This document shows positions 2,093 through 52,536 of a stretch of 64,000 bases of DNA, one piece after another. The stretch comes from Heteronotia binoei (taxonomy: Eukaryota), in NCBI RefSeq assembly GCF_032191835.1, contig NC_083235.1, forward strand, positions 18,104,001 through 18,168,000, read 5' to 3'. The translations under genes were made by a program, and so were the position numbers. Each line of letters begins with the position of its first letter. Within the stretch, counting starts at the first letter, position 1. Under the pieces are notes generated by a model that ran no database searches, had not been told where the DNA came from, and saw only the letters and a list, made by a program, of their open reading frames with translations.

Positions 2093-2248
2093 TGTTCAAG
2101 TGTGCAAAATTGTTAAATATCCTTTTTTCACTATATAACTGGAGTTACACAGTTCCTCAGTATTTTCTTACACTGGAGAGGAGTGTTTTCAATGAATAAA
2201 ATGAGTCAGTTCAGCATTCATAGCCAATAGTGAATTGAAATAAGCTAA

Positions 2249-2535
2249 GGCCGTTTTCGCACTCACGTTTTACTGGCGCCACGACCATCCTGACGCCGGC
2301 GAATCTGCATGGCTTTCGCACCAGAAGCTCCGGCGCTCCCAGAAGCGCCGGCTACTTCCGTCGCTAAGCCAGCGCAAACGGAAATCGCAAAGATGCAGGA
2401 AAACGTTTGCGCTGGCTTAGCGACGGAAAGCGCCGGCGCTTCTGGGAGCGCCGGCGCTTCTGTTGCGAAATCCATGCAGATTCGCCGGCGTCAGGAGGGT
2501 CGTGGCGCCAGTAAAACGTGAGTGCGAAAACTCCC
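2249..2535. mobile_element. PIF/Harbinger-type MITE, near-perfect 287-bp palindrome
   Basis: TIRs GGCCGTTTTCGCAC / GTGCGAAAACTCCC, TAA TSD at 2246-2248 and 2536-2538, ~135-bp complementary arms, CpG-rich. Confidence 0.85.
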
Positions 2536-2689
2536 TAAGTGTCCATTTTTTCCAGAGCAGGGTTGAGGGCTCAGTGCGAAACACCAGCTTTGCTTGTAGC
2601 AGGACCAGGATTCAGTCCTTAGCATATCCAATTTTAAAAGGATATGGTGATAAATAAATGACATGAAAGCCTGCTGGTTGTGACCGTGG

Positions 2690-2990
2690 CTGATTTATCC
2701 TTCAGGTTCTGGTCCTTACCTTCAAGGCCCTACATGGTCTTTGGCCAATGAAGCTGTGGGACCACCTCTCCGGGTATGTCTTCCAAAGAGCTTTACACTC
2801 AGAAGATCAGAATTTACTGGTGGTTCCTGGCCCCAAAGACATCTGGCTGTCCTCAACCAGAGCCAGGGCCCCAGCTTCTGCCTCGTGGAACTCTCTGCCT
2901 GGTGACATCCATGCCCTGAGGGACATTGCACAGTTAAGAAGGGCATACAAGACAGAGATGTTCTACCAGCCTATGGTTGAGGACACCCAC
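2690..2990 (+). mobile_element. L2 LINE ORF2 3' fragment
   Basis: Degenerate VLTFKALHGL...WNSLP...KTEMF motifs; paralogous copy at 37365-37650. Confidence 0.75.
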
Positions 2991-2993
2991 TGG

Positions 2994-2997
2994 ACAT

Positions 2998-3044
<47 letters not shown>

Positions 3045-3085
3045 TTCATTCATTCATTCATTCATTCATTCATTCATTCATTTAT
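2994..3085. repeat. Compound microsatellite (TTTA)n(TTCA)n
   Basis: Seen directly; probably the tail of the minus-strand L2 at 3085-3400. Confidence 0.9.
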
Positions 3086-3400
3086 TTCCGCAGATTTATA
3101 GACCTCCCTTTCCCATAGTGAGCTCAGGACAGCTTCCAACATAATAAAACAATCAAAACAATTTAAAACAGTTAAAACAATTTAAAATTAAAGCAATTGA
3201 GCCACCGCTCACATTAAGGCGGCATGGATGGTATGTACAGGTCAGTGCAATCAGTGTAGGGGGACCAGTTTAGATGGTAAGGACGTCCGTCCACCTCAGC
3301 CATAGGCCTGGTGGAACAGCTCCATCTTACAGGCCCTCCAGAATGATAACAAATCCGAGAGGACCCAAACCTCCGTAGGGAGCTGATTCTCATGACCCAT
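3085..3400 (-). mobile_element. L2 LINE 3' end fragment
   Basis: Reverse strand resembles the L2 ORF2 end and 3' UTR, similar to 8436-8720. Confidence 0.6.
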
Positions 3401-3605
3401 GTTCCACTTTTTACAGAGGGAGAGAAATACATAAATACCATCAATGATTATATCTTAATGGCTTTACTTTGGAATCGAGTGATATTTTGTTTATTTTACT
3501 GAATGTTTTAGCCTGACTGGCACCACCCTGGGCTCTTAGTGGAAGGGAGGTGGTTTATAAATGCAAATTAAAATACATAAACAAGTAAGGCAGCTCTGTG
3601 TGTCA

Positions 3606-3776
3606 CCCTGACCTGGATAGCCAAGGCTAGCCCAATCTCATCTGATCTCAGAAGCTAAGCAGGGCTGTCCCTGGCTAATAGACCAGGATCATTATGTGGA
3701 AGCAGGCAATGGCCAACCATCTTTGAACATCTCTTGCCTTGAAAAAAGTCAATTGTGACTGGATGGCATTTCCACC
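3606..3776 (+). mobile_element. 5S rRNA-derived SINE with Sauria/BovB-like tail (5S-Sauria-like)
   Basis: cccaatctcatctgatctcagaagctaagcagggc matches the 5S rRNA internal promoter region, followed by a gcaggcaatggc...ctcttgccttgaaaa tail. Not a 5S gene. Confidence 0.75.
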
Positions 3777-4063
3777 ATGTGTCAGAATGACATCTGTATG
3801 ATATTAATGGATTCATATAGCATGTCAACATCTCTCAAGAAGCAATGTCCTTCATCTTTAAGTCTAATTTCCATACTAGACATTATGTTTTTTAAAAAAA
3901 GAACCCAGACCCTACTGACTCTCTCTGCTACCATACAACAGCTGTGAGAAATATCACTTTTAAAATGAAAACACAGTTTAGCTCAGAACGACTGCCATTT
4001 CCCCAAAATATCTTCTTGCATTTTTCAGCTGGGGCTACCTTTGCAACAGCAAAGAAAACAAGA

Positions 4064-4109
4064 ATGGCCAAAGCAGTATGCAGAAAGAGCATAGAAGAAC
4101 AGGGGCAAG
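4064..4109 (+). CDS. Predicted upstream coding mini-exon of OR-A (MAKAVCRKSIEEQGQ + G, phase 1)
   Basis: Acceptor tttttcAG at 4027-4028, Kozak agaATGG at 4064, donor CAAG|GTGAAA at 4110; joins in frame to the acceptor at 5121-5122; conserved in OR-C. Confidence 0.6.
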
Positions 4110-5127
4110 GTGAAAAAAATATTTAAAATATTTATTAAAGTGGAAAGTGGATAACTTTGGAGACAATCCCTTCACAAGGTGAATTACAAAATGTGTAGAG
4201 GTCCACAAAAACTTAATATTTTTTCATCTTGTACCTGTTCTGCATACTTTCAGCTGGGGCTACCTATGCCTGGTTATTTTAAAAAAGTTATCATCCAGTT
4301 TGCCCCTCCTTCAACATTCATGGGAGTCTACTTAAGTCAACATTCAATTATTCTTTTCCCTCCTGTGCTTGAAACAAAATTAACTTGATCAGCCTCCAGC
4401 ACAGGGTGACAACCTTATCCATCCTTGATGAAAAACATGGCATGATTTTCTTCACTGATCAGATGCAACAAGGAGCACGGATAAACTTTGCACCAATATT
4501 GTACAAACTAAAATATTCAATCACTAGCAAACAGTCAAAATAAAAGATGACAAGCATTTGAAACAAATCACCATGCTGTTATTATGTACTAAGATTTTAA
4601 AGTCTAATTGTATAATGTTAAAGAGTTTTACGTAATTTTATATTAATGTTAGGTATTCTTTCTGTCTTGTGATCATGATTATTGGTTTTCTTCTTTGCTG
4701 TTAATCTATATTGGTTTTTAATTATTTGTAATGTGTTTTGTATTAACTGGCTTGTTTTATCTTGAGCTTAAGATCATTGGTCAAAGAAGCTAATAAATAA
4801 ATAAATAAAAGGAAAGGAAACAAATTATCCAGATTCATCTGATTTCATCTGAAAGCAGATCTCCTTCCCACTGCAATTTAATTTTTTAAATTAATATGAG
4901 TTTGCTTTATCCAGAGTTGGGAAAACAGTGGATAAAATAAAATTCATTCAGTAAACTGGTACAATAGGAAGAGGTGTACAGTCTGTGCATAGTCGCTCTG
5001 CTCTGGGTCCAAGGTATTCATCTGATTGTCCATTTGGATATTTTACCCATGGATGCACAAATATGTTTGCAAGGCAGAATTTCATGCAGATATTACTATA
5101 GTTTTCCATTTCCCTTTTACAGGTAAT

Positions 5128-6057
5128 ATGGAAGATAATGGAACCACTGTGACTGAGTTTGTACTCATGGGCTTCCCCAGACAACTCCACATGCGCACTG
5201 TATTCTTTGTCTTCTTCTTAGCAATGTATGCCGTCACCATAGCTGGGAATGGTCTCATTGTATTGTTAATTGTGGTGGATTCTCATCTCCACACACCCAT
5301 GTATTTCTTCCTTAGCAACCTCTCCTTCATTGATGTCTGCTATGTCACTACCACTGTCCCACAGATTCTGGCCCTTGGCTTCAAAGAAAAGCCCACTATA
5401 CCTCTGGGCAGGTGTTTTGCACAAATGAGCATCAGCCTTTTTTTGGGAATGGCGGAGTGCCTCTTATTAGCTGTCATGGCTTATGACCGCTTTGTGGCAA
5501 TATGTAGCCCACTACACTATAACTTAATCATGAGCCAGAAGGTGTGCATCATGCTGGCAGTCAGCCTGTGGCTCAGCTCTTTCCTCTTGACCATTGTACC
5601 CTTTTTTAGCATGCCAGCCCGCTTGTGTGGCCACAATGTGGTGAATCATTTTTCATGTGAGCTCCAAGCAGTGTTGAAATTGGCTTGCTCTGACACTCAT
5701 GCCAATGGGCTTATCATGTTGATAACGAGTGTCTTCACACTTCTGTTCCCCTTTGCCTTCATCCTGCTGACCTATGGGCGCATTGGTCTAGCTGTCCTGC
5801 GCATCCGTTCGGTTGAAGGCCGAAGCAAAGCTTTATCTACTTGTGGCTCTCATTTGGCTGTCGTGGGCATCTTCTATGGCACCGCCATGGCTGCATACCT
5901 GAGGCCTCAGACCAAGACTTTCACAGACAGGGAAAAAGTAGTGTCTATCTTTTATGGGGTTGTGACCCCAATGCTCAACCCCTTGATATACAGCCTGAGG
6001 AACAGGGATGTGAAGGGAGCCTTTTGGAGGCTGATTGGGAGGGAAACAGAGAAGTAA
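5128..6057 (+). CDS. OR-A: intact class II olfactory receptor (OR2/OR13-like), 309 aa from ATG 5128; 326 aa if spliced to 4064-4109
   Basis: Motifs NGT glycosylation site, LHTPMYFFLSNLS, MAYDRFVAICSPLHY, KALSTCGSHL, PMLNPLIYSLRN; acceptor ttttacAG at 5121-5122; AATAAA at 6483-6488. Confidence 0.96.
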   Translation: MEDNGTTVTEFVLMGFPRQLHMRTVFFVFFLAMYAVTIAGNGLIVLLIVVDSHLHTPMYFFLSNLSFIDVCYVTTTVPQILALGFKEKPTIPLGRCFAQMSISLFLGMAECLLLAVMAYDRFVAICSPLHYNLIMSQKVCIMLAVSLWLSSFLLTIVPFFSMPARLCGHNVVNHFSCELQAVLKLACSDTHANGLIMLITSVFTLLFPFAFILLTYGRIGLAVLRIRSVEGRSKALSTCGSHLAVVGIFYGTAMAAYLRPQTKTFTDREKVVSIFYGVVTPMLNPLIYSLRNRDVKGAFWRLIGRETEK

Positions 6058-6989
6058 ACCACTTGTGGACTCATTGTCTATACCAAGGGTGGCTAAACAT
6101 ACTTAACATAAGAAGCACACCGAATAAACATCAGATGTTTGAGAGCCACAAGACAGGAAGGAAAAAGGGAGTGAGGGAGAGATGGAAAGAAAGGAACTTT
6201 AAGTTTAAATGCATTCTCCAAGCCACCAGCTGCCTTAGCTTGGAGGAGTGGTTTAAAGAGAGAAATGCCTTCTACAAACTAACTGATGGGGCAGTGGGGG
6301 CTTCGAGAGCCACACAATATGTGTGAAAGAGCCACATGTGGCTCCTGAGCCACAGTTCAGCTACCCAGGTCTATACTGATATCCTTTTAGAATGAATATG
6401 TCTAACCATGTTTCTGTGTGTGACTTCAATGAACATTGTATGTTATTAATATCACGTTATCAGTGAACATTACTCTTTGCATAATAAATATATACATGAA
6501 TGAAGCAAATAGGTTTCCTTCTTTTTCTTGGTTGAAAGGCAAAATCCAATTTGTTGTCAGTGTTTGAAATAACTTTACTGACACAGAATTCAGGGGTATT
6601 GCAAGGGCAAAAGGTACCCTTTGGGGAAGAAGCGGGGTGTGTGTGTGTGCAGATGCACTCCAAGCCATAAATTTGTGGCTTGGAGTGCATGCTCACAAGC
6701 CCTCTGCTTCTTCTCAAAAGGACTCAATGGGACCCTTTAAATGCTTTCAAGAAGCGAGGATAGCACCCGCTCCTCTCCGTCCTGCAGGATCCAAATGGCC
6801 CTCCAGATGACCAATGGGCCATATGCTCCATGTCGATCAATTGAAGGGCCCCTCACATTCTGCAGGAGGGGAGGGAGAGGAGCAGCCGCAGGTGGTCAGG
6901 GTTGGTGGCAGGACTTCTCCTCACCTGACAGCTGCCTGGAGGTGCATTGGAGCCCCCAAAACCAGGGGAACCCCACTGGGCCTAGGAGG

Positions 6990-7918: not shown

Positions 7919-8435
7919 NNNNNNNNNNNNNNNNNNNNNNNNNNNNNNNNNNNNNNNNNNNNNNNNNNNNNNNNNNNNNNNNNNNNNNNNNNNNNNNNNN
8001 NNNNNNNNNNNNNNNNNNNNNNNNNNNNNNNNNNNNNNNNNNNNNNNNNNNNNTCCCCTGCCGAAGCAGGCTCAGGGCGGCTAACAATACGGTGCCCCAT
8101 GGTGCACCAACAATAAAACAGTTACATTGGAAACATTAAATTAAACATTAAATTAACCTTAAAAGCCTGAATTAAAACAATTAACTAAAACATATTATAA
8201 CGCTATCCTTGACACTCTTCTAGNNNNNNNNNNNNNNNNNNNNNNNNNNNNNNNNNNNNNNNNNNNNNNNNNNNNNNNNNNNNNNNNNNNNNNNNNNNNN
8301 NNNNNNNNNNNNNNNNNNNNNNNNNNNNNNNNNNNNNNNNNNNNNNNNNNNNNNNNNNNNNNNNNNNNNNNNNNNNNNNNNNNNNNNNNNNNNNNNNNNN
8401 NNNNNNNNNNNNNNNNNNNNNNNNNNNNNNNNNNN
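7919..8435. other. Assembly gaps (7919-8053 and 8224-8435) flanking a 170-bp island resembling an L2 tail
   Basis: N runs seen directly. Confidence 0.99.
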
Positions 8436-18400: not shown

Positions 18401-20283
18401 ACCAAAGGGGAAAGCACAGCCCAACCTATGAGTTCTGCAGTACTAGAACAAATTTCCACCTATTTCAGTATTCTGTTTCCAGTAGTGGCTAGCAAAAACT
18501 AACTTACCTTTTCAGGAAGGACAGAACCAGATAAAGACTTGGAAGCGATTGGATACACTTCAGAGATAAATTCAAAATTTTTGGAAGTTTCTGCTCCAGG
18601 GCTGGTGTCCAGATCTTCAGACCATGAGACTTTGTTACATGTCATAGCTAATACTTATGGATAGATCCATTCTATATGTTCTACACCCCTGTTAAAAATT
18701 ATCCTCTTTCTCTGCTTCTGAAATTTCAGGAGTTCCTGTCAGAGAAGCTGATTTCCTTTTGCCCTAAGAGGGTACCAGCCTTGCTATCATAGAATATTGG
18801 ACCTATTGTGGTTCTACAAGACTTGGGGTTTCCTTCCCCCTCCCCCACCCTTACAGCTATTCACATGAATGTGTTCCACTACTGTATGAGTTTTTCTTTG
18901 ACCTGGCACTTTGGTGCAAACAGTTGCAGGGATAGTGCTGTGGTGAAACTCCATCATAAAAGGACTGCAGAATGTTTCTGTCAATCTTCACAACCGACAA
19001 GGTCAGTGGTTTCTTTATAATAATCAAATGTCAACAGTATTTAGAAAGAGACATCGAAAACATGTAAATATCCAGAGGAATCTTAGGATAAGGGTGTGTA
19101 GTCAAATTGGACACTTTGGACTGTCTGATCCAAGTGCTGTGGAAAGAGACTTCCTCTCTGCTCTTGGTGGATGCCTGTATCTTAAGGTTGACCAGTGTGG
19201 GGAACAGAATTAGAAATCAAAAGTGGTTGCAGATGATTGGAAGAGATGCATGGATATTGTGAGGCAGAGTCCAGTTCTGAGATTTATCTCTTGAAAGGAG
19301 CCATGTAGATATTCCTGTTTAGGATTCTAGTGGGTTCTTTTTAAAAACAAACAAACAAACAAACCTGTGTCTTCTATCACCCATTACATTTAGATTTTGC
19401 TGAAAGATAAATTAATTGAATCATCTCAAAGGCTGAGAAGAACAGGGCTCTTTCTTGACCTCCATCCCAGTACTTACGTTGTATGTCTCACAAAGGATCG
19501 GATATACAGATCTTCTGCTAGTAGTATTATCTGCTTTGGGTTTTTCAAATACCCACAGTTCAAGCCAGTATTTTCACAAGTCTTTCAATGCAAACATCCG
19601 CAGTCTGTTACCATACAGAATGCTGCCAACTGTTCATGAAAGATGACTGAAATTGCTGCTCTTTTTGTGAACACAGACTTTATACAATCATATGAGAGTC
19701 TCAACTCAAGAGTATTTATGCCATTAAAGCTTCTGAATCTGAATCAGCGCAGGAGGAAACGGGTAGAGTAAGCAAGGTAAGCAAACCATTGCAAAGTAAA
19801 CCACTGCAAACCATTGCAAAGCAAAGTTTATTTTCAATGATTTACAATTATTGCTATACATTTTGTTCTACAGTTTTCAACAAGATGTTATTTAGTGGCT
19901 GACATACAATAATGTGATGCACGATTTGAGGCCCAGAGAGAATTCAGTTCAATCCTCAGTTTGACCTCACTCATGCAGTTATTGTGAGAATGAAATGAGG
20001 GAGTAGAAAACTATGTGTGTTATTCTAAATGCCTTGGAGGAATCGATGTATAGAAACATAGTAGGTAGATATTCTTCAAGGTCAACTTACTTTTCAAGGA
20101 CAATTGCTGATGTTCCACAAATGGACTTCCGTTGCCTTTTCCTAACATTTCACTAGCCTTCTCTGATCTATTGTGCTACTATCTGAACCACAATTCAGAA
20201 GCCCAGAGAATATCCAAGATGTGCCGTGTCCCAAGAAGTATGTTTCTATTTCTTTTACAGGGAACAAAACAGGAAAGGACCAT

Positions 20284-21225
20284 ATGGGGGACAGCAACAC
20301 GACTGAGGTGAACGAGTTCATCTTGCTTGGGATTTCCGATCACCCCAGGGCTCAGGTGGTGATGTTTGTGGTTTTTCTCATCTTCTACCTCCTCACACTA
20401 TTCGGTAACAGCCTTCTCATTGCCCTAATCATTCTGAGTCCCCTTCTTCACACACCAATGTATTTCTTTCTTTGCAACCTCTCCTTCTTGGACATGTTCT
20501 ACACCACCAGCAGCATTCCTCAGATGCTGATTAACTGTTTCTTCCGCCGACCCACCATATCCTATACCCGATGCATAATTGGGATGTATGTCAGTCTCTT
20601 TCTCGGCATAGCAGAGTGTTTCTTGCTGGCTGTCATGGCGTATGACCGCTTTGCCGCCGTATGCAACCCTTTGCATTACACTGTCATAATGAGTTGGAAA
20701 GTTTGTATCCAGTTGGCTGCCTCGACTTGGGGCAGTGCCATTGTGATGACTCTGATCCCTCGGTTGCTTCAACCCACTCAGTTTTGTGGACACAACATCA
20801 TCAACCACTTCACTTGTGAGCTACAGGCATTCCTCAAGCTGGCTTGCTCAGATACACGTGTGGCTGAGATTGTCATCATGACCAACAGCTTTATTGTCCT
20901 TGTTGCGCCCTTCAGTTTCATCTTGGTGACCTATGGGCGCATTGCCCAGGCTGTGATGCGCATGCACTCAGCCAAGGGACGAGGCAAGGCTTTTTCAACC
21001 TGTGGGTCCCATCTGGTGGTGGTCAGCATCTTCTATGGATCAGCCCTCTCCATGTACTTGCGGCCTCAAGGCAAAACCATCTCTGACCTTGACAAAATTG
21101 TCTCCCTGTTTTATGGAGCGGTGACCCCAATGCTCAACCCTTTGATTTACAGCTTTAGAAATAAAGATGTGAAAGGAGCCTTTTGGAGACTACTTGGGAA
21201 GAAAATGAAGACTTTGCCCTCCTAA
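20284..21225 (+). CDS. OR-B: intact class II olfactory receptor, 313 aa
   Basis: NTT glycosylation site, LHTPMYFFLCNLS, MAYDRF, KAFSTCGSHL, PMLNPLIYSFRN; acceptor tcttttacAG at 20259-20260; candidate upstream donor AAG|GTAAGC at 19777. Confidence 0.96.
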   Translation: MGDSNTTEVNEFILLGISDHPRAQVVMFVVFLIFYLLTLFGNSLLIALIILSPLLHTPMYFFLCNLSFLDMFYTTSSIPQMLINCFFRRPTISYTRCIIGMYVSLFLGIAECFLLAVMAYDRFAAVCNPLHYTVIMSWKVCIQLAASTWGSAIVMTLIPRLLQPTQFCGHNIINHFTCELQAFLKLACSDTRVAEIVIMTNSFIVLVAPFSFILVTYGRIAQAVMRMHSAKGRGKAFSTCGSHLVVVSIFYGSALSMYLRPQGKTISDLDKIVSLFYGAVTPMLNPLIYSFRNKDVKGAFWRLLGKKMKTLPS

Positions 21226-38336: not shown

Positions 38337-38561
38337 CTTAAGTCTAATTTGCAACTGAAATTTTATTTTTAAAGAGAACCCAAACTTGACTGACTCCTAG
38401 AACCACACAACAGCTGTGAGATATATCACTTTTAAAATAAGGGAGAACCTAATTTGACTCAGAACTGTGATGGAAGACCTTCCTCCCATGCCACCAATTT
38501 CTTAAGGCAAAATATCTCCCTGCATTTTTCAGCTGGAGCTACCAGCAGTGAAGAAACAAGA

Positions 38562-38607
38562 ATGGCTGCACCAGGAGGCAGAAAGAATGCAGAAGAACAG
38601 ATGCAAG
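38562..38607 (+). CDS. Predicted upstream coding mini-exon of OR-C (MAAPGGRKNAEEQMQ + G, phase 1)
   Basis: Acceptor tttttcAG at 38531-38532, Kozak agaATGG, donor CAAG|GTGAAT at 38608; in frame with the acceptor at 40318-40319. Confidence 0.6.
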
Positions 38608-38834
38608 GTGAATTTTTTATTATTATTAAAAATATTTATTAAGGTGGAAACTGGATAACTTTGGAAATGATCCCCTGACAAAGTGAATTGTGAAACATGT
38701 AGGGATCCAGAAGAACTTAATCAATATTTTTTCACCTTGCACCTGTTCTTCAAGATCCTTTCAGCTGGGGCTATCCATGCCTGGCTATTTTTTAAAAAGT
38801 ATCATCTAATTTGACTCCCGCTCTACATTCATTA

Positions 38835-39146
38835 GCGGTCCCGTGACGCAGAGTGGTAAAGCAGAAGTACTGAAGTACTGTGATCTGAATTCTCTGCTCA
38901 CGACCTGAGATTGATTCCGGCGGAAGCTGGATTCAGGTAGCCGGCCCAAGGTCGACTCAGCCTTCCATCCTTCCGAGGTCGGTAAAATGAGTACCCAGCT
39001 TGCTGGGGGGAAAGCGTAAAAGACTGGGGAAGGCAATGGCAAACCACCACGTAAAAAGTCTGCTGTGAAAACGTTGTGAAAGCAACATCACCCCAGAGTC
39101 GGAAACGACTGGTGCTTGCACAGGGGACCTCTCCTTTTTCCTTTTC
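38835..39146 (+). mobile_element. Full-length Sauria SINE
   Basis: tRNA-like head gtgacgcagagtggtaaag, core gactcagccttccatccttccgaggtcggtaaaatgagtacccagc, BovB-like tail; 12-bp TSD ctacattcatta (38823-38834, 39147-39158). Confidence 0.9.
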
Positions 39147-39226
39147 CTACATTCATTAAGTCTACTTAAGTCAACATTCAATTATTATTTTTTCTTCTGC
39201 GCTTGAAACAGAATTAACTTAATCAG

Positions 39227-39831
39227 AGGAAATGTGGAGAAATTGGAACTTTCAGTCACATGTGGTGGGATTGTCCCTTAGTGAAAAAATTCTGGATGCA
39301 GGTTGGCATAGAGATGACAAAGATTATGGGATGGAAAATAAGTATATCCAAAGCAATGGCAATTATTAATTTGGATGGTGTGGGATTAAGATTAAAAGAG
39401 GATAGTAAATGGATTAATTTGATGTTAGTAGCAGCAAGACAAGTGATAGCAAGGAATTGGAAAGAAGCTGAGGAATTGACAATTAATCACTGGAGGGATA
39501 GAATGAATAGTATAATTATTTTGGAGTATTTAACGATGAAGATACGAAGAATGAATGGATTAAAGGTTAGGGAACAGGAGGAGGGATGGTTTAGGAAGAT
39601 GGTGAGATATTTGGAAAAGTTTAAACAATTTAAGACGATTGGTTGGTTAATAAGAAAATGAATGGATAAGATGTTTAAATAGAGTGACGGAGTTGTATTT
39701 GGACGGAATGTTAATAGTTATAAATTTATGGAATATTATAATGTATCTATGGCCTGGGACTCTCACAGAGGTGGATTGGTGGTGGAATACATAACAATAA
39801 AAAATTTTATTAAAAAAAAAAAAAAAAAAAA
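39227..39831 (+). mobile_element. L1-clade LINE 3' end with poly(A)
   Basis: HMWWDCPLVKKFW and LVAARQVIARNWK are L1 ORF2 C-terminal cysteine-rich motifs; 20-nt poly(A) at 39812-39831; absent from the OR-A paralog. Confidence 0.85.
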
Positions 39832-40324
39832 CAATTTAATTCACCCTCAATGAAAAATGTTGTATGATTTTCTTCAATGATGCAATTGCAGAGTCAACAA
39901 AGAGCACATATAAACATTGTTCCAATATTGTACAAATTAAACTATTAGATCAGTGGAAAACACTCAAAATAAAAAGTGGCATATTTGAAACAAATTACTC
40001 ATTTTCATCTGAAAACAGATTTCCTTCCCACTGCAATTTAATTTCTTCTTTCTCCAGAGTTGCAGATAACTGTGGGTAAAATCAAATTCATTTAGTAAAG
40101 TATGGTAAGTTGTGAACTGGACCAATTTTGTGGTTGAGATTTAAAGGCATACAATATACATTGTGAGCATATTCAGTCCACTCTGGGTCCAACTCCACTC
40201 TGGGTCCAAGATATTTATCTGAATGTCCATTTGGACATTTAATCAAAGGATGCACTGACATGTTTACAAGATGGAATTTCATACAGATATTACTATGATT
40301 CTCCATTTCCCTTCTACAGGAAAC

Positions 40325-41260
40325 ATGGAAGACTGGGATAATGGAACCACTGTGACTGAGTTTGTACTCATGGGCTTTCCCAGACAGCTCCACATGCGCA
40401 TTGCAATGTTTGTCCTCTTCTTAGCCATGTATACAGTCACCATAGTTGGGAACGGTCTCGTTGTATTATTGATTGTGGTGGATTCTCATCTCCACACACC
40501 CATGTATTTCTTCCTTTGCAACCTCTCCTTTATCGATGTCTGCTATGTCTCTACCTATGTCCCACAGGTTCTGGCAGATAGCTTCAAAGACAAAGCTGTT
40601 ATACCTTGGGGTAGGTGTTCTGCACAAATGAGTGTCGGCCTTTTTCTGGGAGTGTCTGAATATCTCTTACTAGCTGTCATGGCTTATGACCGCTTTGTGG
40701 CCATATGCAGCCCATTGCACTATAATGTAATCATGAGCCAGAAGCTGTGCATCATACTGGCACTCGGCCTGTGGTGCGGCTCTTTCTTCTTGACCATTGT
40801 ATCCTTTTATAGCATGCTGGCACAGTTGTGTGGCCACAACACGGTAAATCATTTTACATGTGAGCTCCAAGCAGTGTTGAAATTCGCTTGCTCTGACACT
40901 AAAGCCAGTGGACTTAACATGCTGATAACGAGCGTCTTCACTCTTCTGTTCCCCTTTGCCTTCATCCTGCTGACCTATGGGCGCATTGGTCTGGCTGTCC
41001 TGCGCATCCGCTCAGCTGAAGGCCGGGGCAAAGCTTTATCCACCTGTGGCTCTCATCTGGTTGTCGTGAGCATCTTCTATGGCACTGCCATGGCCGCATT
41101 CCTGAGGCCTCAGGCCAAGACTTTCACAGATAGTGAAAAAATAGTGTCTATCTTTTATGGGATTGTGACCCCAATGCTCAACCCCTTGATCTACAGTCTG
41201 AGAAACAGAGATGTGAAGGGAGCCTTTTGGCGGCTGATCAGAAGGGAAACAGAGAAGTAA
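40325..41260 (+). CDS. OR-C: intact class II olfactory receptor, 311 aa from ATG 40325; 328 aa if spliced; paralog of OR-A
   Basis: All canonical OR motifs; acceptor cttctacAG at 40318-40319; AATAAA at 41405-41410. Confidence 0.96.
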   Translation: MEDWDNGTTVTEFVLMGFPRQLHMRIAMFVLFLAMYTVTIVGNGLVVLLIVVDSHLHTPMYFFLCNLSFIDVCYVSTYVPQVLADSFKDKAVIPWGRCSAQMSVGLFLGVSEYLLLAVMAYDRFVAICSPLHYNVIMSQKLCIILALGLWCGSFFLTIVSFYSMLAQLCGHNTVNHFTCELQAVLKFACSDTKASGLNMLITSVFTLLFPFAFILLTYGRIGLAVLRIRSAEGRGKALSTCGSHLVVVSIFYGTAMAAFLRPQAKTFTDSEKIVSIFYGIVTPMLNPLIYSLRNRDVKGAFWRLIRRETEK

Positions 41261-51331: not shown

Positions 51332-51603
51332 TGTGTGTGTTATTCTAAATACCTTGGAAGAATCGATGTCTAGAAACATAGTAGGTAGATATACTTCAAG
51401 GTCAACTTACTTTTCAAGGACAATTGCTGATGTTCCACAAATGGACTTCCGTTGCCTTTTCCTAACATTTCACTGGCCTTCTCTGATCTATTGTGCCACT
51501 ATCTGAACCACAATTCAGAAGCCCAGAGAATATCCAAGATGTGCCGTGTCCCAAGAAGTATGTTTCTATTTATTTTACAGGGAACAAAACAGGAAAGGAC
51601 CAT

Positions 51604-52536
51604 ATGGGGGATAGCAACACGTCCGAGGTGAACGAGTTCATCTTGCTTGGGATTTCCGATAACCCCAGGGCTCAGATGGTGATGTTTGTGGTTTTTCTCA
51701 TCTTCTACCTCCTCACACTATTCGGTAACAGCCTTCTCATTGCCCTAATCATTCTGAGTCCCCTTCTTCACACACCGATGTATTTCTTTCTTTGCAACCT
51801 CTCCTTCTTGGACATGTTCTACACCACCTGCAGCATTCCTCAGATGCTGATTAACTGTTTCATCCGCCGACCCACCATATCCTATACCCGATGCATAATT
51901 GTGATGTATGCCGGTCTCCTTCTCGGCATAGCAGAATGTTTCTTGCTGGCTGTCATGGCGTATGACCGCTTTAACGCCATATGCAACCCTTTGCATTACA
52001 CCGTCATAATGAGTTGGAAGGTGTGTATCCAGTTGGCCGCCTTATCTTGGGGCAGTGCCATTGTGATCGCTCTGATGCCTCGGCTGTTTCAACCCACTCA
52101 GTTTTGTGGCCACAACATCATCAACCACTTCACTTGTGAGCTTCAGTCGTTCTTCAAGCTGGCTTGCTCAGATATACATGTGGCTGAGATTGTCATCACG
52201 ACCAATGGCTTTATTGTCCTTGTTGTGCCCTTCAGTTTCATCTTGGTGACCTATGGGCGCATTGCCCAGGCTGTGATGCGCATGCACTCAGCCAAGGGAC
52301 GAGGCAAGGCTTTTTCAACCTGTGGGTCCCATCTGGTGGTGGTCAGCATCTTCTATGGATCAGCCTTCTCCATGTACTTGCGGCCTCAAGGCAAAACCAT
52401 CTCTGACCTTGACAAAATTGCCTCCCTGTTTTATGGAGTGGTGGCCCCAATGCTCAACCCTTTGATTTACAGCCTTAGAAATAAAGATGTGAAAGGAGCC
52501 TTTTGGAGAGTGCTTGGGAAGAAAATGCCTGAATGA
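51604..52536 (+). CDS. OR-D: intact class II olfactory receptor, 310 aa; paralog of OR-B
   Basis: All OR motifs; acceptor tattttacAG at 51579-51580; upstream donor AAG|GTAAGT at 50903; an 8-nt insertion at the C-terminus gives an earlier stop than in OR-B. Confidence 0.96.
   Translation: MGDSNTSEVNEFILLGISDNPRAQMVMFVVFLIFYLLTLFGNSLLIALIILSPLLHTPMYFFLCNLSFLDMFYTTCSIPQMLINCFIRRPTISYTRCIIVMYAGLLLGIAECFLLAVMAYDRFNAICNPLHYTVIMSWKVCIQLAALSWGSAIVIALMPRLFQPTQFCGHNIINHFTCELQSFFKLACSDIHVAEIVITTNGFIVLVVPFSFILVTYGRIAQAVMRMHSAKGRGKAFSTCGSHLVVVSIFYGSAFSMYLRPQGKTISDLDKIASLFYGVVAPMLNPLIYSLRNKDVKGAFWRVLGKKMPE

What the first reader, a model, noticed from the sequence alone, without database searches (positions are those of the whole stretch)
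4029..6057. OR-A appears to have a split coding region: in-frame upstream mini-exon adds 17 aa
Seen: exon 4029-4109 has an AG acceptor, a strong Kozak ATG (4064), 15 codons plus one G, and donor GTGAAA. Splicing to 5123 gives MAKAVCRKSIEEQGQ-G-N-MEDNGT in frame. Known: OR coding regions are usually intronless, though two-exon coding ORs are described in human and mouse. A single-ORF annotation would miss this; the ORF track instead reads through intron sequence from 5026.
Basis: partly seen in the sequence, partly recalled or inferred. Interest (0 to 1): 0.7.

Follow-up and report, generated by a model that had tools for sequence, protein, structure and literature searches.

The report
Optional upstream start in gecko smell-receptor
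A smell-receptor gene of Bynoe's gecko has a short upstream piece whose start codon would, if spliced in, add 17 amino acids to the receptor, but the piece is a young insertion that drifts like neutral DNA, the public annotation of this gene uses another upstream exon, and the same kind of thing is known in mouse and human, so it is ordinary.

Summary
AG 4027-28, exon 4029-4109, ATG 4064 (A at -3, G at +4), 15 codons plus G and donor GTGAAA join AG 5121-22 / exon 5123 in phase: MAKAVCRKSIEEQGQ-G-N-MEDNGT.

It is not more than chance: 31% of GT sites in the 3 kb upstream would also give an in-frame ATG extension.

The genome is Heteronotia binoei. OR-A is an intact OR13H1-like receptor wholly encoded in 5128-6057. 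RefSeq models OR-A differently (XP_060109279.1, MDGN+MEDNGT: ATG 3224, donor after 3230). A third paralog with an intact mini-exon is modelled without any extension.

ATG and donor lie in a 225-bp foldback insertion flanked by an 18-22-nt direct repeat. It is present in the three Heteronotia paralogs and absent in Gekko and Eublepharis. The peptide is unconstrained (dN/dS 1.17 against 0.32 for the receptor exon). No RNA run was listed, so the junction is untested.

Best reading: a young, optional leader exon with an in-frame upstream ATG, not an obligatory split coding region. This kind is known from Barnes et al. 2020. The scan had already reached the same conclusion on paralog OR-C (s1-338026) and noted similar cases elsewhere in this genome.

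The parts
5128..6057 (+). Canonical single-exon coding region of OR-A (309 aa plus stop), an OR13H1-like olfactory receptor
   Evidence: Pfam 7tm_4 E=1e-52. 100% identical to residues 5-313 of RefSeq XP_060109279.1 of Heteronotia binoei.
5107..5122 (+). Pyrimidine tract plus AG acceptor 5 nt before the start codon; exon 2 begins at 5123
   Evidence: The tract and AG are kept in 8 of 9 gecko genes aligned, and shifted by 1 nt in Sphaerodactylus. RefSeq uses it for OR-A: the gene span 3224-6057 and the 313-aa length fit 7 nt plus 5123-6057.
4029..4109 (+).
   Evidence: Homologous exons lie at window 38533-38607 (OR-C) and L002 8784-8858 (OR-E). Only the OR-C copy is used in RefSeq.
4064..4109 (+). 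In-frame upstream ATG plus 15 codons plus the first base of a split Gly codon
   Evidence: A versus C: 12 of 46 nt differ, dN/dS 1.17. Identity is 0.739 against 0.77-0.86 in the flanks.
4110..4115 (+). Donor AAG|GTGAAA, weaker than the paralogs' AAG|GTGAAT
   Evidence: Rough scores are 2.9 (OR-A) against 4.6 (OR-C).
4110..5122 (+). Putative intron of 1013 nt
   Evidence: The length lies within the range of last introns of mouse ORs (550-22628 bp, PMC7055050).
4041..4247 (+). Heteronotia-lineage insertion that carries the ATG and the donor
   Evidence: Absent from Gekko japonicus (L003 about 8342-8360) and Eublepharis macularius (L006), present in OR-A, OR-C and OR-E. No other copy in the window or the fetched loci.
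4023..4044 (+). Direct repeat copy 1 (TTTCAGCTGGGGCTACCT...), which holds the AG 'acceptor' of the mini-exon; the sequence is ancestral
   Evidence: It is single-copy in Gekko and Eublepharis.
4248..4269 (+). Direct repeat copy 2
4096..4118 (+). Left arm of an inverted repeat; it includes the donor site
   Evidence: 23 nt, 87% complementary to 4219-4241. The RNA fold has z = -4.1 in both the OR-A and OR-C copies.
4219..4241 (+). Right arm of the inverted repeat
3224..3230 (+). Start codon plus 4 nt (ATGGATG|GTATGT) of the RefSeq model of OR-A (MDGN...)
   Evidence: It lies in repeat-like DNA just after an (ATTT)n/(CATT)n run.
38533..38607 (+). Paralogous mini-exon of OR-C (ATG 38562; MAAPGGRKNAEEQMQ plus G), joined to 40320 in RefSeq XP_060109280.1

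Best explanation
OR-A is an ordinary, intact OR13H1-like olfactory receptor gene of Heteronotia binoei. The whole receptor is encoded in one exon (5128-6057). As in most vertebrate OR genes, a conserved acceptor just before the start codon (AG 5121-22) receives non-coding leader exons. The stretch 4029-4109 is a candidate alternative leader exon. It was created when a 225-bp foldback insertion, specific to the Heteronotia lineage, placed an ATG and a GT donor next to an older, conserved pyrimidine-AG block. If that exon is spliced 4109^5123, its ATG (good context, in phase, no stop) would be met first by scanning ribosomes, and the receptor would carry 17 extra hydrophilic residues on its extracellular tail. 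That makes it an in-frame upstream ATG, or N-terminal extension isoform. Shown here: the anatomy, the phase, the origin by insertion, retention in three paralogs, neutral drift of the peptide, and the use of the equivalent exon in RefSeq's OR-C model. Inferred: that OR-A uses it at all. Its donor is weaker than in OR-C, and RefSeq's OR-A model uses a donor at 3230 instead. The extension, if made, is most likely selectively neutral and not required for function.
For: The coordinates and phase are verified. The acceptor before the ATG is conserved across four gecko genera. The same exon, phase and joint form a RefSeq protein for paralog OR-C (P0121, 328 aa). The ORF, donor and acceptor are intact in all three Heteronotia paralogs. 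The insertion is polarised by Gekko and Eublepharis, both single-copy, and by a tree in which OR-A+(OR-C,OR-E) form a clade with support 98. dN/dS is 1.17 in the mini-exon against 0.32 in the receptor exon, and mini-exon identity is no higher than in flanking non-coding DNA. Barnes et al. 2020 report in-frame upstream ATGs in 13.6% of human and 21.5% of mouse ORs, and OR isoforms with alternative N-termini (PMC7055050).
Against: No RNA run was listed, so no junction read supports 4109^5123. RefSeq's model of OR-A uses donor 3230, and its model of OR-E uses no extension although that mini-exon is intact. OR-A's donor lacks the +5 G and the +6 T. The donor lies in the stem of a predicted long hairpin, which could hinder its use. 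In-frame ATG extensions arise by chance at about 31% of GT sites. Neutral retention of the ORF between the paralogs has probability 0.13-0.21, so retention is no proof of selection.
Confidence: 0.55

Rival explanations
1. RefSeq reading: OR-A's leader exon ends at 3230 (ATGGATG|GTATGT) and joins 5123, giving MDGN-MEDNGT (313 aa). On this reading the 4029-4109 stretch is simply intronic in OR-A.
For: P0001 = XP_060109279.1 begins MDGNMEDNGT. The only ATGGAYGGT in the window is at 3224. The gene span of 2834 bases equals 3224-6057. The donor score of 3.5 is slightly better than that of 4110. Most H. binoei RefSeq ORs of this subfamily start at the canonical Met, and OR-C and OR-E are modelled differently despite 97% identity at the mini-exon. 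Both facts suggest, by inference, that the spliced starts rest on transcript evidence rather than ab initio habit.
Against: I could not see the evidence behind the RefSeq model. The exon lies in repeat-like DNA with no counterpart upstream of OR-C or OR-E. OR genes commonly have several alternative leader exons, so this does not exclude use of 4109. An mRNA holding both exons would still be in one frame (81-nt exon; ORF 3944-4126 is open).
Confidence: 0.3
2. One reading: the functional OR-A protein starts at 4064, and the coding region is truly split, maintained by selection.
For: The ATG has a good context and is first in the exon. The ATG, the 15-codon length, the phase and the donor are kept in three paralogs at dS of about 0.28. 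RefSeq adopts this for OR-C.
Against: dN/dS is 1.17, with 10 non-synonymous changes where about 3 are expected at the receptor exon's rate. The piece is absent in Gekko and Eublepharis. Retention is compatible with neutrality (p of about 0.13-0.21). The conserved downstream Met gives a full-length receptor on its own. By the criteria of Barnes et al. such cases are excluded from split ORs. RefSeq's OR-A model differs.
Confidence: 0.1
3. No exon at all: the mini-exon is a chance ORF in promoter-proximal or intronic DNA in all three paralogs, and the OR-C RefSeq model is a prediction artefact.
For: The chance rate of in-frame extensions is 31%. There is no RNA evidence. The three paralogs are modelled inconsistently. 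The sequence drifts neutrally.
Against: An ab initio artefact should treat OR-C and OR-E alike, since they are 97% identical here. The GT donor is kept in all three copies, and the intron length and acceptor are typical.
Confidence: 0.15

Closest known systems
[quoted passage not shown] 2020, BMC Genomics 21:196, PMC7055050)
   Same: A short upstream exon supplies the initiator Met and a few residues of the extracellular N-terminus. The intron lies before TM1 and is of ordinary last-intron length. An alternative isoform is encoded in a single exon.
   Different: The curated mammalian cases have RNA-seq junction support and a Met and junction conserved in orthologues. Cases with a conserved downstream Met that gives a full-length single-exon ORF were deliberately excluded. 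Here there is no RNA evidence, the exon is lineage-specific, and the downstream Met is conserved.
In-frame upstream ATGs in OR 5' leaders (13.6% of human and 21.5% of mouse protein-coding ORs; PMC7055050)
   Same: An ATG in a leader exon lies in phase with the receptor ORF and has no intervening stop. It is expected often by chance (31% of GT sites here).
   Different: Nothing essential, provided the exon is transcribed. That is the unproven step.
RefSeq XP_060109280.1, olfactory receptor 13H1-like of Heteronotia binoei (OR-C, window 38562-38607 plus 40320-41260)
   Same: A homologous mini-exon with the same length (15 codons plus G), the same phase and the same G-N-M joint.
   Different: 12 of 46 nt differ. 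OR-C has the better donor (GTGAAT). RefSeq does not apply this model to OR-A or OR-E.
Exonisation of inserted DNA as new 5' exons (general phenomenon; from my own knowledge, not tested)
   Same: Inserted DNA brings a donor site, and here also an ATG, next to a pre-existing acceptor-like or promoter-proximal sequence.
   Different: The insert is not a recognisable high-copy element in the sequence I hold. It is a foldback flanked by an unusually long 18-22-nt direct repeat.

Membership tests
Vertebrate olfactory receptor (Pfam 7tm_4; OR13H1-like) | Full-length match to the 7tm_4 profile above the gathering score | tested here: met
   PF13853 scores 180 bits against a cut-off of 27, covering residues 30-303 and profile positions 1-277 of 280.
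Vertebrate olfactory receptor (Pfam 7tm_4; OR13H1-like) | Intact ORF of about 310 aa with an N-terminal N-x-T site and the motifs PMYFFL, MAYDRF, KALSTCGSH and PMLNPLIY | tested here: met
   All are visible in the translation. The closest relatives are named olfactory receptor 13H1-like in geckos.
Split-coding OR genes in the sense of Barnes et al. 2020 | Intact ORF spanning two exons with canonical GT-AG | tested here: met
   The phase was checked by reading; the joined sequence was not built or searched.
Split-coding OR genes in the sense of Barnes et al. 2020 | Transcript (RNA-seq) support for the exon junction | not testable with these tools
   No RNA run was listed for the stretch, so no reads could be laid.
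Split-coding OR genes in the sense of Barnes et al. 2020 | Initiator Met and splice junction conserved in orthologues (or in the closest paralogues if there are no orthologues) | tested here: not met
   The ATG and donor are absent in the Gekko japonicus and Eublepharis counterparts. They are kept only in the lineage-specific paralogs OR-C and OR-E.
Split-coding OR genes in the sense of Barnes et al. 2020 | No conserved downstream Met that yields a full-length single-exon ORF (their exclusion rule) | tested here: not met
   Met 5128 (MED..N.T) is conserved in all relatives and gives a 309-aa receptor. The rule is quoted.
In-frame upstream ATG in an OR leader exon | An ATG upstream of the canonical start, in phase after splicing, with no stop between | tested here: met
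In-frame upstream ATG in an OR leader exon | The exon is part of the mature mRNA | not testable with these tools
   The only indirect support is RefSeq's model of paralog OR-C.

The most novel reading that the evidence does not exclude
A foldback insertion gave birth, within the Heteronotia lineage, to a new coding first exon that is really spliced and translated in three duplicated receptor genes. These receptors would then carry a de novo 17-residue N-terminal tail that affects membrane insertion or trafficking. The donor-masking hairpin would tune how often the long form is made.
Probability: 0.1. Interest if true: 0.4.

Novelty: new member of a known kind. Interest (0 to 1): 0.15.

Why it matters
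If the exon is used, it is a dated example of how an OR gene gains an N-terminal extension. The insertion came after the Heteronotia/Gekko split and before a local triplication. It would also be one of the few such cases outside mammals. In practice it mainly matters for annotation. Three near-identical paralogs carry three different RefSeq start models, so OR start sites in this genome should not be taken at face value. It does not change what is known about OR biology.

Tried and rejected
1. RNA evidence. The look-up of sequencing runs on window 3000-6200 listed no RNA run. Read laying could therefore not be used and the decisive junction test was not possible.
2. Transcript assemblies. The clusters of P0001 and P0121 hold only the genome-derived RefSeq proteins, seen on one contig each.
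3. The joined (spliced) protein was not built, searched or looked up. The exons were handled separately by reference, and the phase was checked by reading and by walking back in genomic sequence only.
4. Selection on the ORF. Retention of the ATG, frame, absence of stops and donor in OR-A versus OR-C was simulated under neutrality. The probabilities were 0.13-0.21 for the ORF and 0.07-0.14 with the donor. I rejected retention as evidence of constraint.
5. A high-copy transposon as the source of the insert. There are no further copies in the window or in seven fetched loci, so the source remains unknown.
6. A deletion in Gekko instead of an insertion in Heteronotia. This was rejected because Eublepharis, the outgroup, also has the uninterrupted single-copy site and because OR-A, OR-C and OR-E form one clade.
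7. A paper search for an H. binoei genome or RNA-seq description found nothing useful.
8. The Sphaerodactylus locus (L005) gave no alignable counterpart of the mini-exon region, so it is uninformative.

Full report
**1. The observation**

- Reading the window confirms every coordinate.
- A pyrimidine tract and cAG end at 4028, and the candidate exon is 4029-4109 (81 nt).
- ATG 4064 sits in aagaATGg, with A at -3 and G at +4.
- Window 4064-4108 translates to MAKAVCRKSIEEQGQ. G at 4109 is followed by GTGAAA.
- Downstream, ccctttta-cAG ends at 5122 and the next exon begins GT AAT ATG. The joint therefore reads Gly-Asn-Met, followed by EDNGTT....
- The ORF that the mechanical list starts at 5026 is a TTG-started read-through of the last 100 nt of the intron.
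- I did not build or search the joined sequence.

**2. Is it more than chance?**

- No. I walked back from every GT in 2123-5090, in the phase that joins 5123.
- Of 134 GT sites, 42 (31%) reach an ATG before a stop.
- Among the 8 sites whose donor score is at least that of 4110, 4 do. The scoring matrix is approximate and recalled from memory; it serves only as a ranking device.
- An in-frame ATG in a possible leader exon is therefore expected often.
- This fits the 13.6% (human) and 21.5% (mouse) of ORs with in-frame upstream ATGs reported by Barnes et al. 2020 (PMC7055050).

**3. What the gene is**

- The 309-aa product of 5128-6054 matches Pfam 7tm_4 at 180 bits.
- It is 100% identical to residues 5-313 of 'olfactory receptor 13H1-like [Heteronotia binoei]', P0001 = XP_060109279.1.
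- The window is CM063337.1 of GCA_032191835.1. Window position 1 is about 18,104,001.
- The acceptor 5 nt before the start codon, with its pyrimidine tract, is kept in 8 of 9 related gecko genes from Heteronotia, Gekko, Eublepharis and Sphaerodactylus.
- This is the usual OR layout, in which non-coding leader exons are spliced on just before the ATG (established knowledge).

**4. What the public annotation does**

- RefSeq's OR-A protein begins MDGN-MEDNGT.
- The only ATGGAYGGT in the window is at 3224, and the called gene spans exactly 3224-6057.
- That start lies in repeat-like DNA right after an (ATTT)n/(CATT)n run. It has no counterpart upstream of the paralogs.
- For paralog OR-C (window 40325-41260), RefSeq's XP_060109280.1 (P0121, 328 aa) begins MAAPGGRKNAEEQMQGN-MEDWDNGT.
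- A third paralog, OR-E, lies just beyond the window (L002 10001-10936). Its mini-exon is intact (MAAPAGRKNAEEQMQ plus G, with GTGAAT donor and acag|gaaacATG acceptor). RefSeq nevertheless models it without extension (P0004, 311 aa).
- Most other H. binoei ORs of this subfamily also start at the canonical Met.
- OR-C and OR-E are 97% identical around the mini-exon yet are modelled differently. I infer that the spliced starts follow sparse transcript evidence rather than ab initio habit. I could not see that evidence.

**5. Origin of the mini-exon**

- A 17-22-nt motif, TTTCAGCTGGGGCTACCT, occurs twice, 225 nt apart: at 4023-4044 and 4248-4269. It also occurs twice upstream of OR-C.
- The counterparts in Gekko japonicus (L003 about 8342) and Eublepharis macularius (L006) have one copy. 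There the left flank of copy 1 runs directly into the right flank of copy 2.
- Eublepharis is the outgroup to Gekkonidae. In a maximum-likelihood tree of the receptor exons, OR-A+(OR-C,OR-E) form a clade (support 98) sister to Gekko P0002.
- The extra 225 bp is therefore an insertion. It arose in the Heteronotia lineage after the split from Gekko and before the local gene duplications.
- The AG 'acceptor' at 4028 is ancestral sequence. The ATG and the GT donor came with the insert.
- The insert folds back on itself. Arms 4096-4118 and 4219-4241 are 87% complementary, and the RNA fold has z = -4.1 in both the OR-A and OR-C copies.
- The donor lies inside the stem.
- No other copy of the insert exists in the sequence I hold, so its source is unknown.

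**6. Is the peptide under selection?**

- OR-A and OR-C differ at 12 of 46 nt in the coding part of the mini-exon.
- dN/dS there is 1.17, against 0.32 for the receptor exon at the same dS of about 0.28.
- Ten non-synonymous changes are seen where about three would be expected at the receptor exon's rate.
- Identity in the mini-exon coding part is 0.739, no higher than in the surrounding non-coding DNA (0.77-0.86).
- A neutral simulation used the observed divergence and indel rate. It gives 0.13-0.21 for keeping the ATG, the frame and an open reading frame, and 0.07-0.14 if the donor must also be kept.
- Retention in the paralogs is therefore no proof of constraint.
- The canonical Met 5128 has A at -3, G at +4 and the NGT glycosylation site right after it. 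It is conserved throughout.

**7. How it most likely works**

- OR-A's receptor is complete in one exon.
- Stretch 4029-4109 is a young candidate leader exon.
- If it is included, scanning ribosomes would meet ATG 4064 first and make a receptor with 17 extra hydrophilic residues on the extracellular tail (three basic, two acidic, no signal-peptide character, by inspection). Leaky scanning would still give the normal protein.
- This is an in-frame upstream ATG or N-terminal extension isoform, most likely neutral.
- Whether OR-A uses it is open. Its donor (AAG|GTGAAA) is weaker than the paralogs' (GTGAAT; 2.9 against 4.6). It sits in a hairpin stem. RefSeq prefers donor 3230 for this gene.
- OR genes commonly have several alternative leaders, so the two models do not exclude each other.
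- The 81-nt exon also keeps the phase. An mRNA carrying both leader exons would read through from 3224, because ORF 3944-4126 is open.

**8. Comparison with what is known**

- Barnes et al. [quoted passage not shown]
- They required transcript support and a Met and junction conserved in orthologues.
- They excluded cases in which a conserved downstream Met gives a full-length single-exon ORF.
- OR-A fails the conservation criterion and falls under the exclusion rule. The transcript criterion could not be tested.
- It therefore works like their second class (alternative N-terminal isoforms), or like the common in-frame upstream ATGs. It would not be filed as a split OR.

**9. Earlier notes of this scan**

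- Note s1-338026 on OR-C made four claims: a gecko genome, a RefSeq model, an insertion after the split from Gekko, and neutral drift.
- I re-derived each of them independently and agree.
- Notes s1-325723 and s1-338009 report similar upstream-start cases elsewhere in this genome. I did not test those.

**10. Limits**

- No RNA run was listed, so no reads were laid.
- The donor scores rest on a matrix recalled from memory.
- The reasoning about how RefSeq built its models is inference.

**Verdict**

- It is a new member of a known kind, of low interest.

Noticed in passing
window 4041-4247 (and 38545-38762): The Heteronotia-only 225-bp insert is a foldback. Arms 4096-4118 and 4219-4241 pair, and the RNA fold has z = -4.1 in both paralog copies. 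The putative splice donor lies inside the stem. The flanking direct repeat of 18-22 nt is unusually long for a target-site duplication, and the source of the insert is unknown.
   Followed up: partly
window 5040-5127; L002, L003, L004, L006 and L007 just upstream of the OR start: The last 80 nt or so of the intron are 82% identical across nine gecko OR genes. An in-frame ATG (MEFH.D.T...) lies 54 nt upstream of the canonical start and is kept in 6 of the 9. RefSeq uses it as the start of 329-aa models in Euleptes and Eublepharis, and a 329-aa gene is called in Gekko (source not checked). In OR-A it is lost (ATG to GCA), and another in-frame ATG sits at 5053.
   Followed up: partly
window 3940-4040: A block including CTTTTAAAAT (3957-3966) and CATTTTTCAGCTGGGGCTACC is conserved between Heteronotia, Gekko and Eublepharis, more than its surroundings. 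It may be the ancestral promoter or transcription start, or a leader-exon boundary. If transcription starts here, the AG at 4028 is not an acceptor.
   Followed up: no
window 2999-3343: RefSeq's start codon for OR-A (3224) lies just after a long (ATTT)n/(CATT)n microsatellite in repeat-like DNA. Pieces of that DNA (3300-3343) match non-homologous places in the Gekko and Sphaerodactylus loci. It looks like a transposon-derived alternative first exon.
   Followed up: partly
window 38840-39150 and 39226-39832; L002 9085-9390: The introns of OR-C and OR-E hold a SINE-like insertion of about 300 bp that is absent from OR-A. OR-C alone has a further insertion of about 600 bp ending in a poly-A run. 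These explain the longer intron (1712 nt against 1013 nt).
   Followed up: no
window 5128-6057, 20173-21225, 40325-41260, 51493-52536; L002 10001-10936 and 14575-15507: This is a tandem array of duplicated OR pairs with a period of about 32-35 kb. OR-C and OR-E are very recent copies (dS 0.05). OR-A split from them at dS 0.28, about as old as the split from the Gekko orthologue.
   Followed up: partly
window 3224-3230 + 4029-4109 + 5123: The mini-exon is 81 nt long and the frame is open from 3944 to 4126. A transcript containing both the RefSeq leader exon and the mini-exon would therefore stay in one reading frame from ATG 3224, adding 31 residues before the canonical Met.
   Followed up: no
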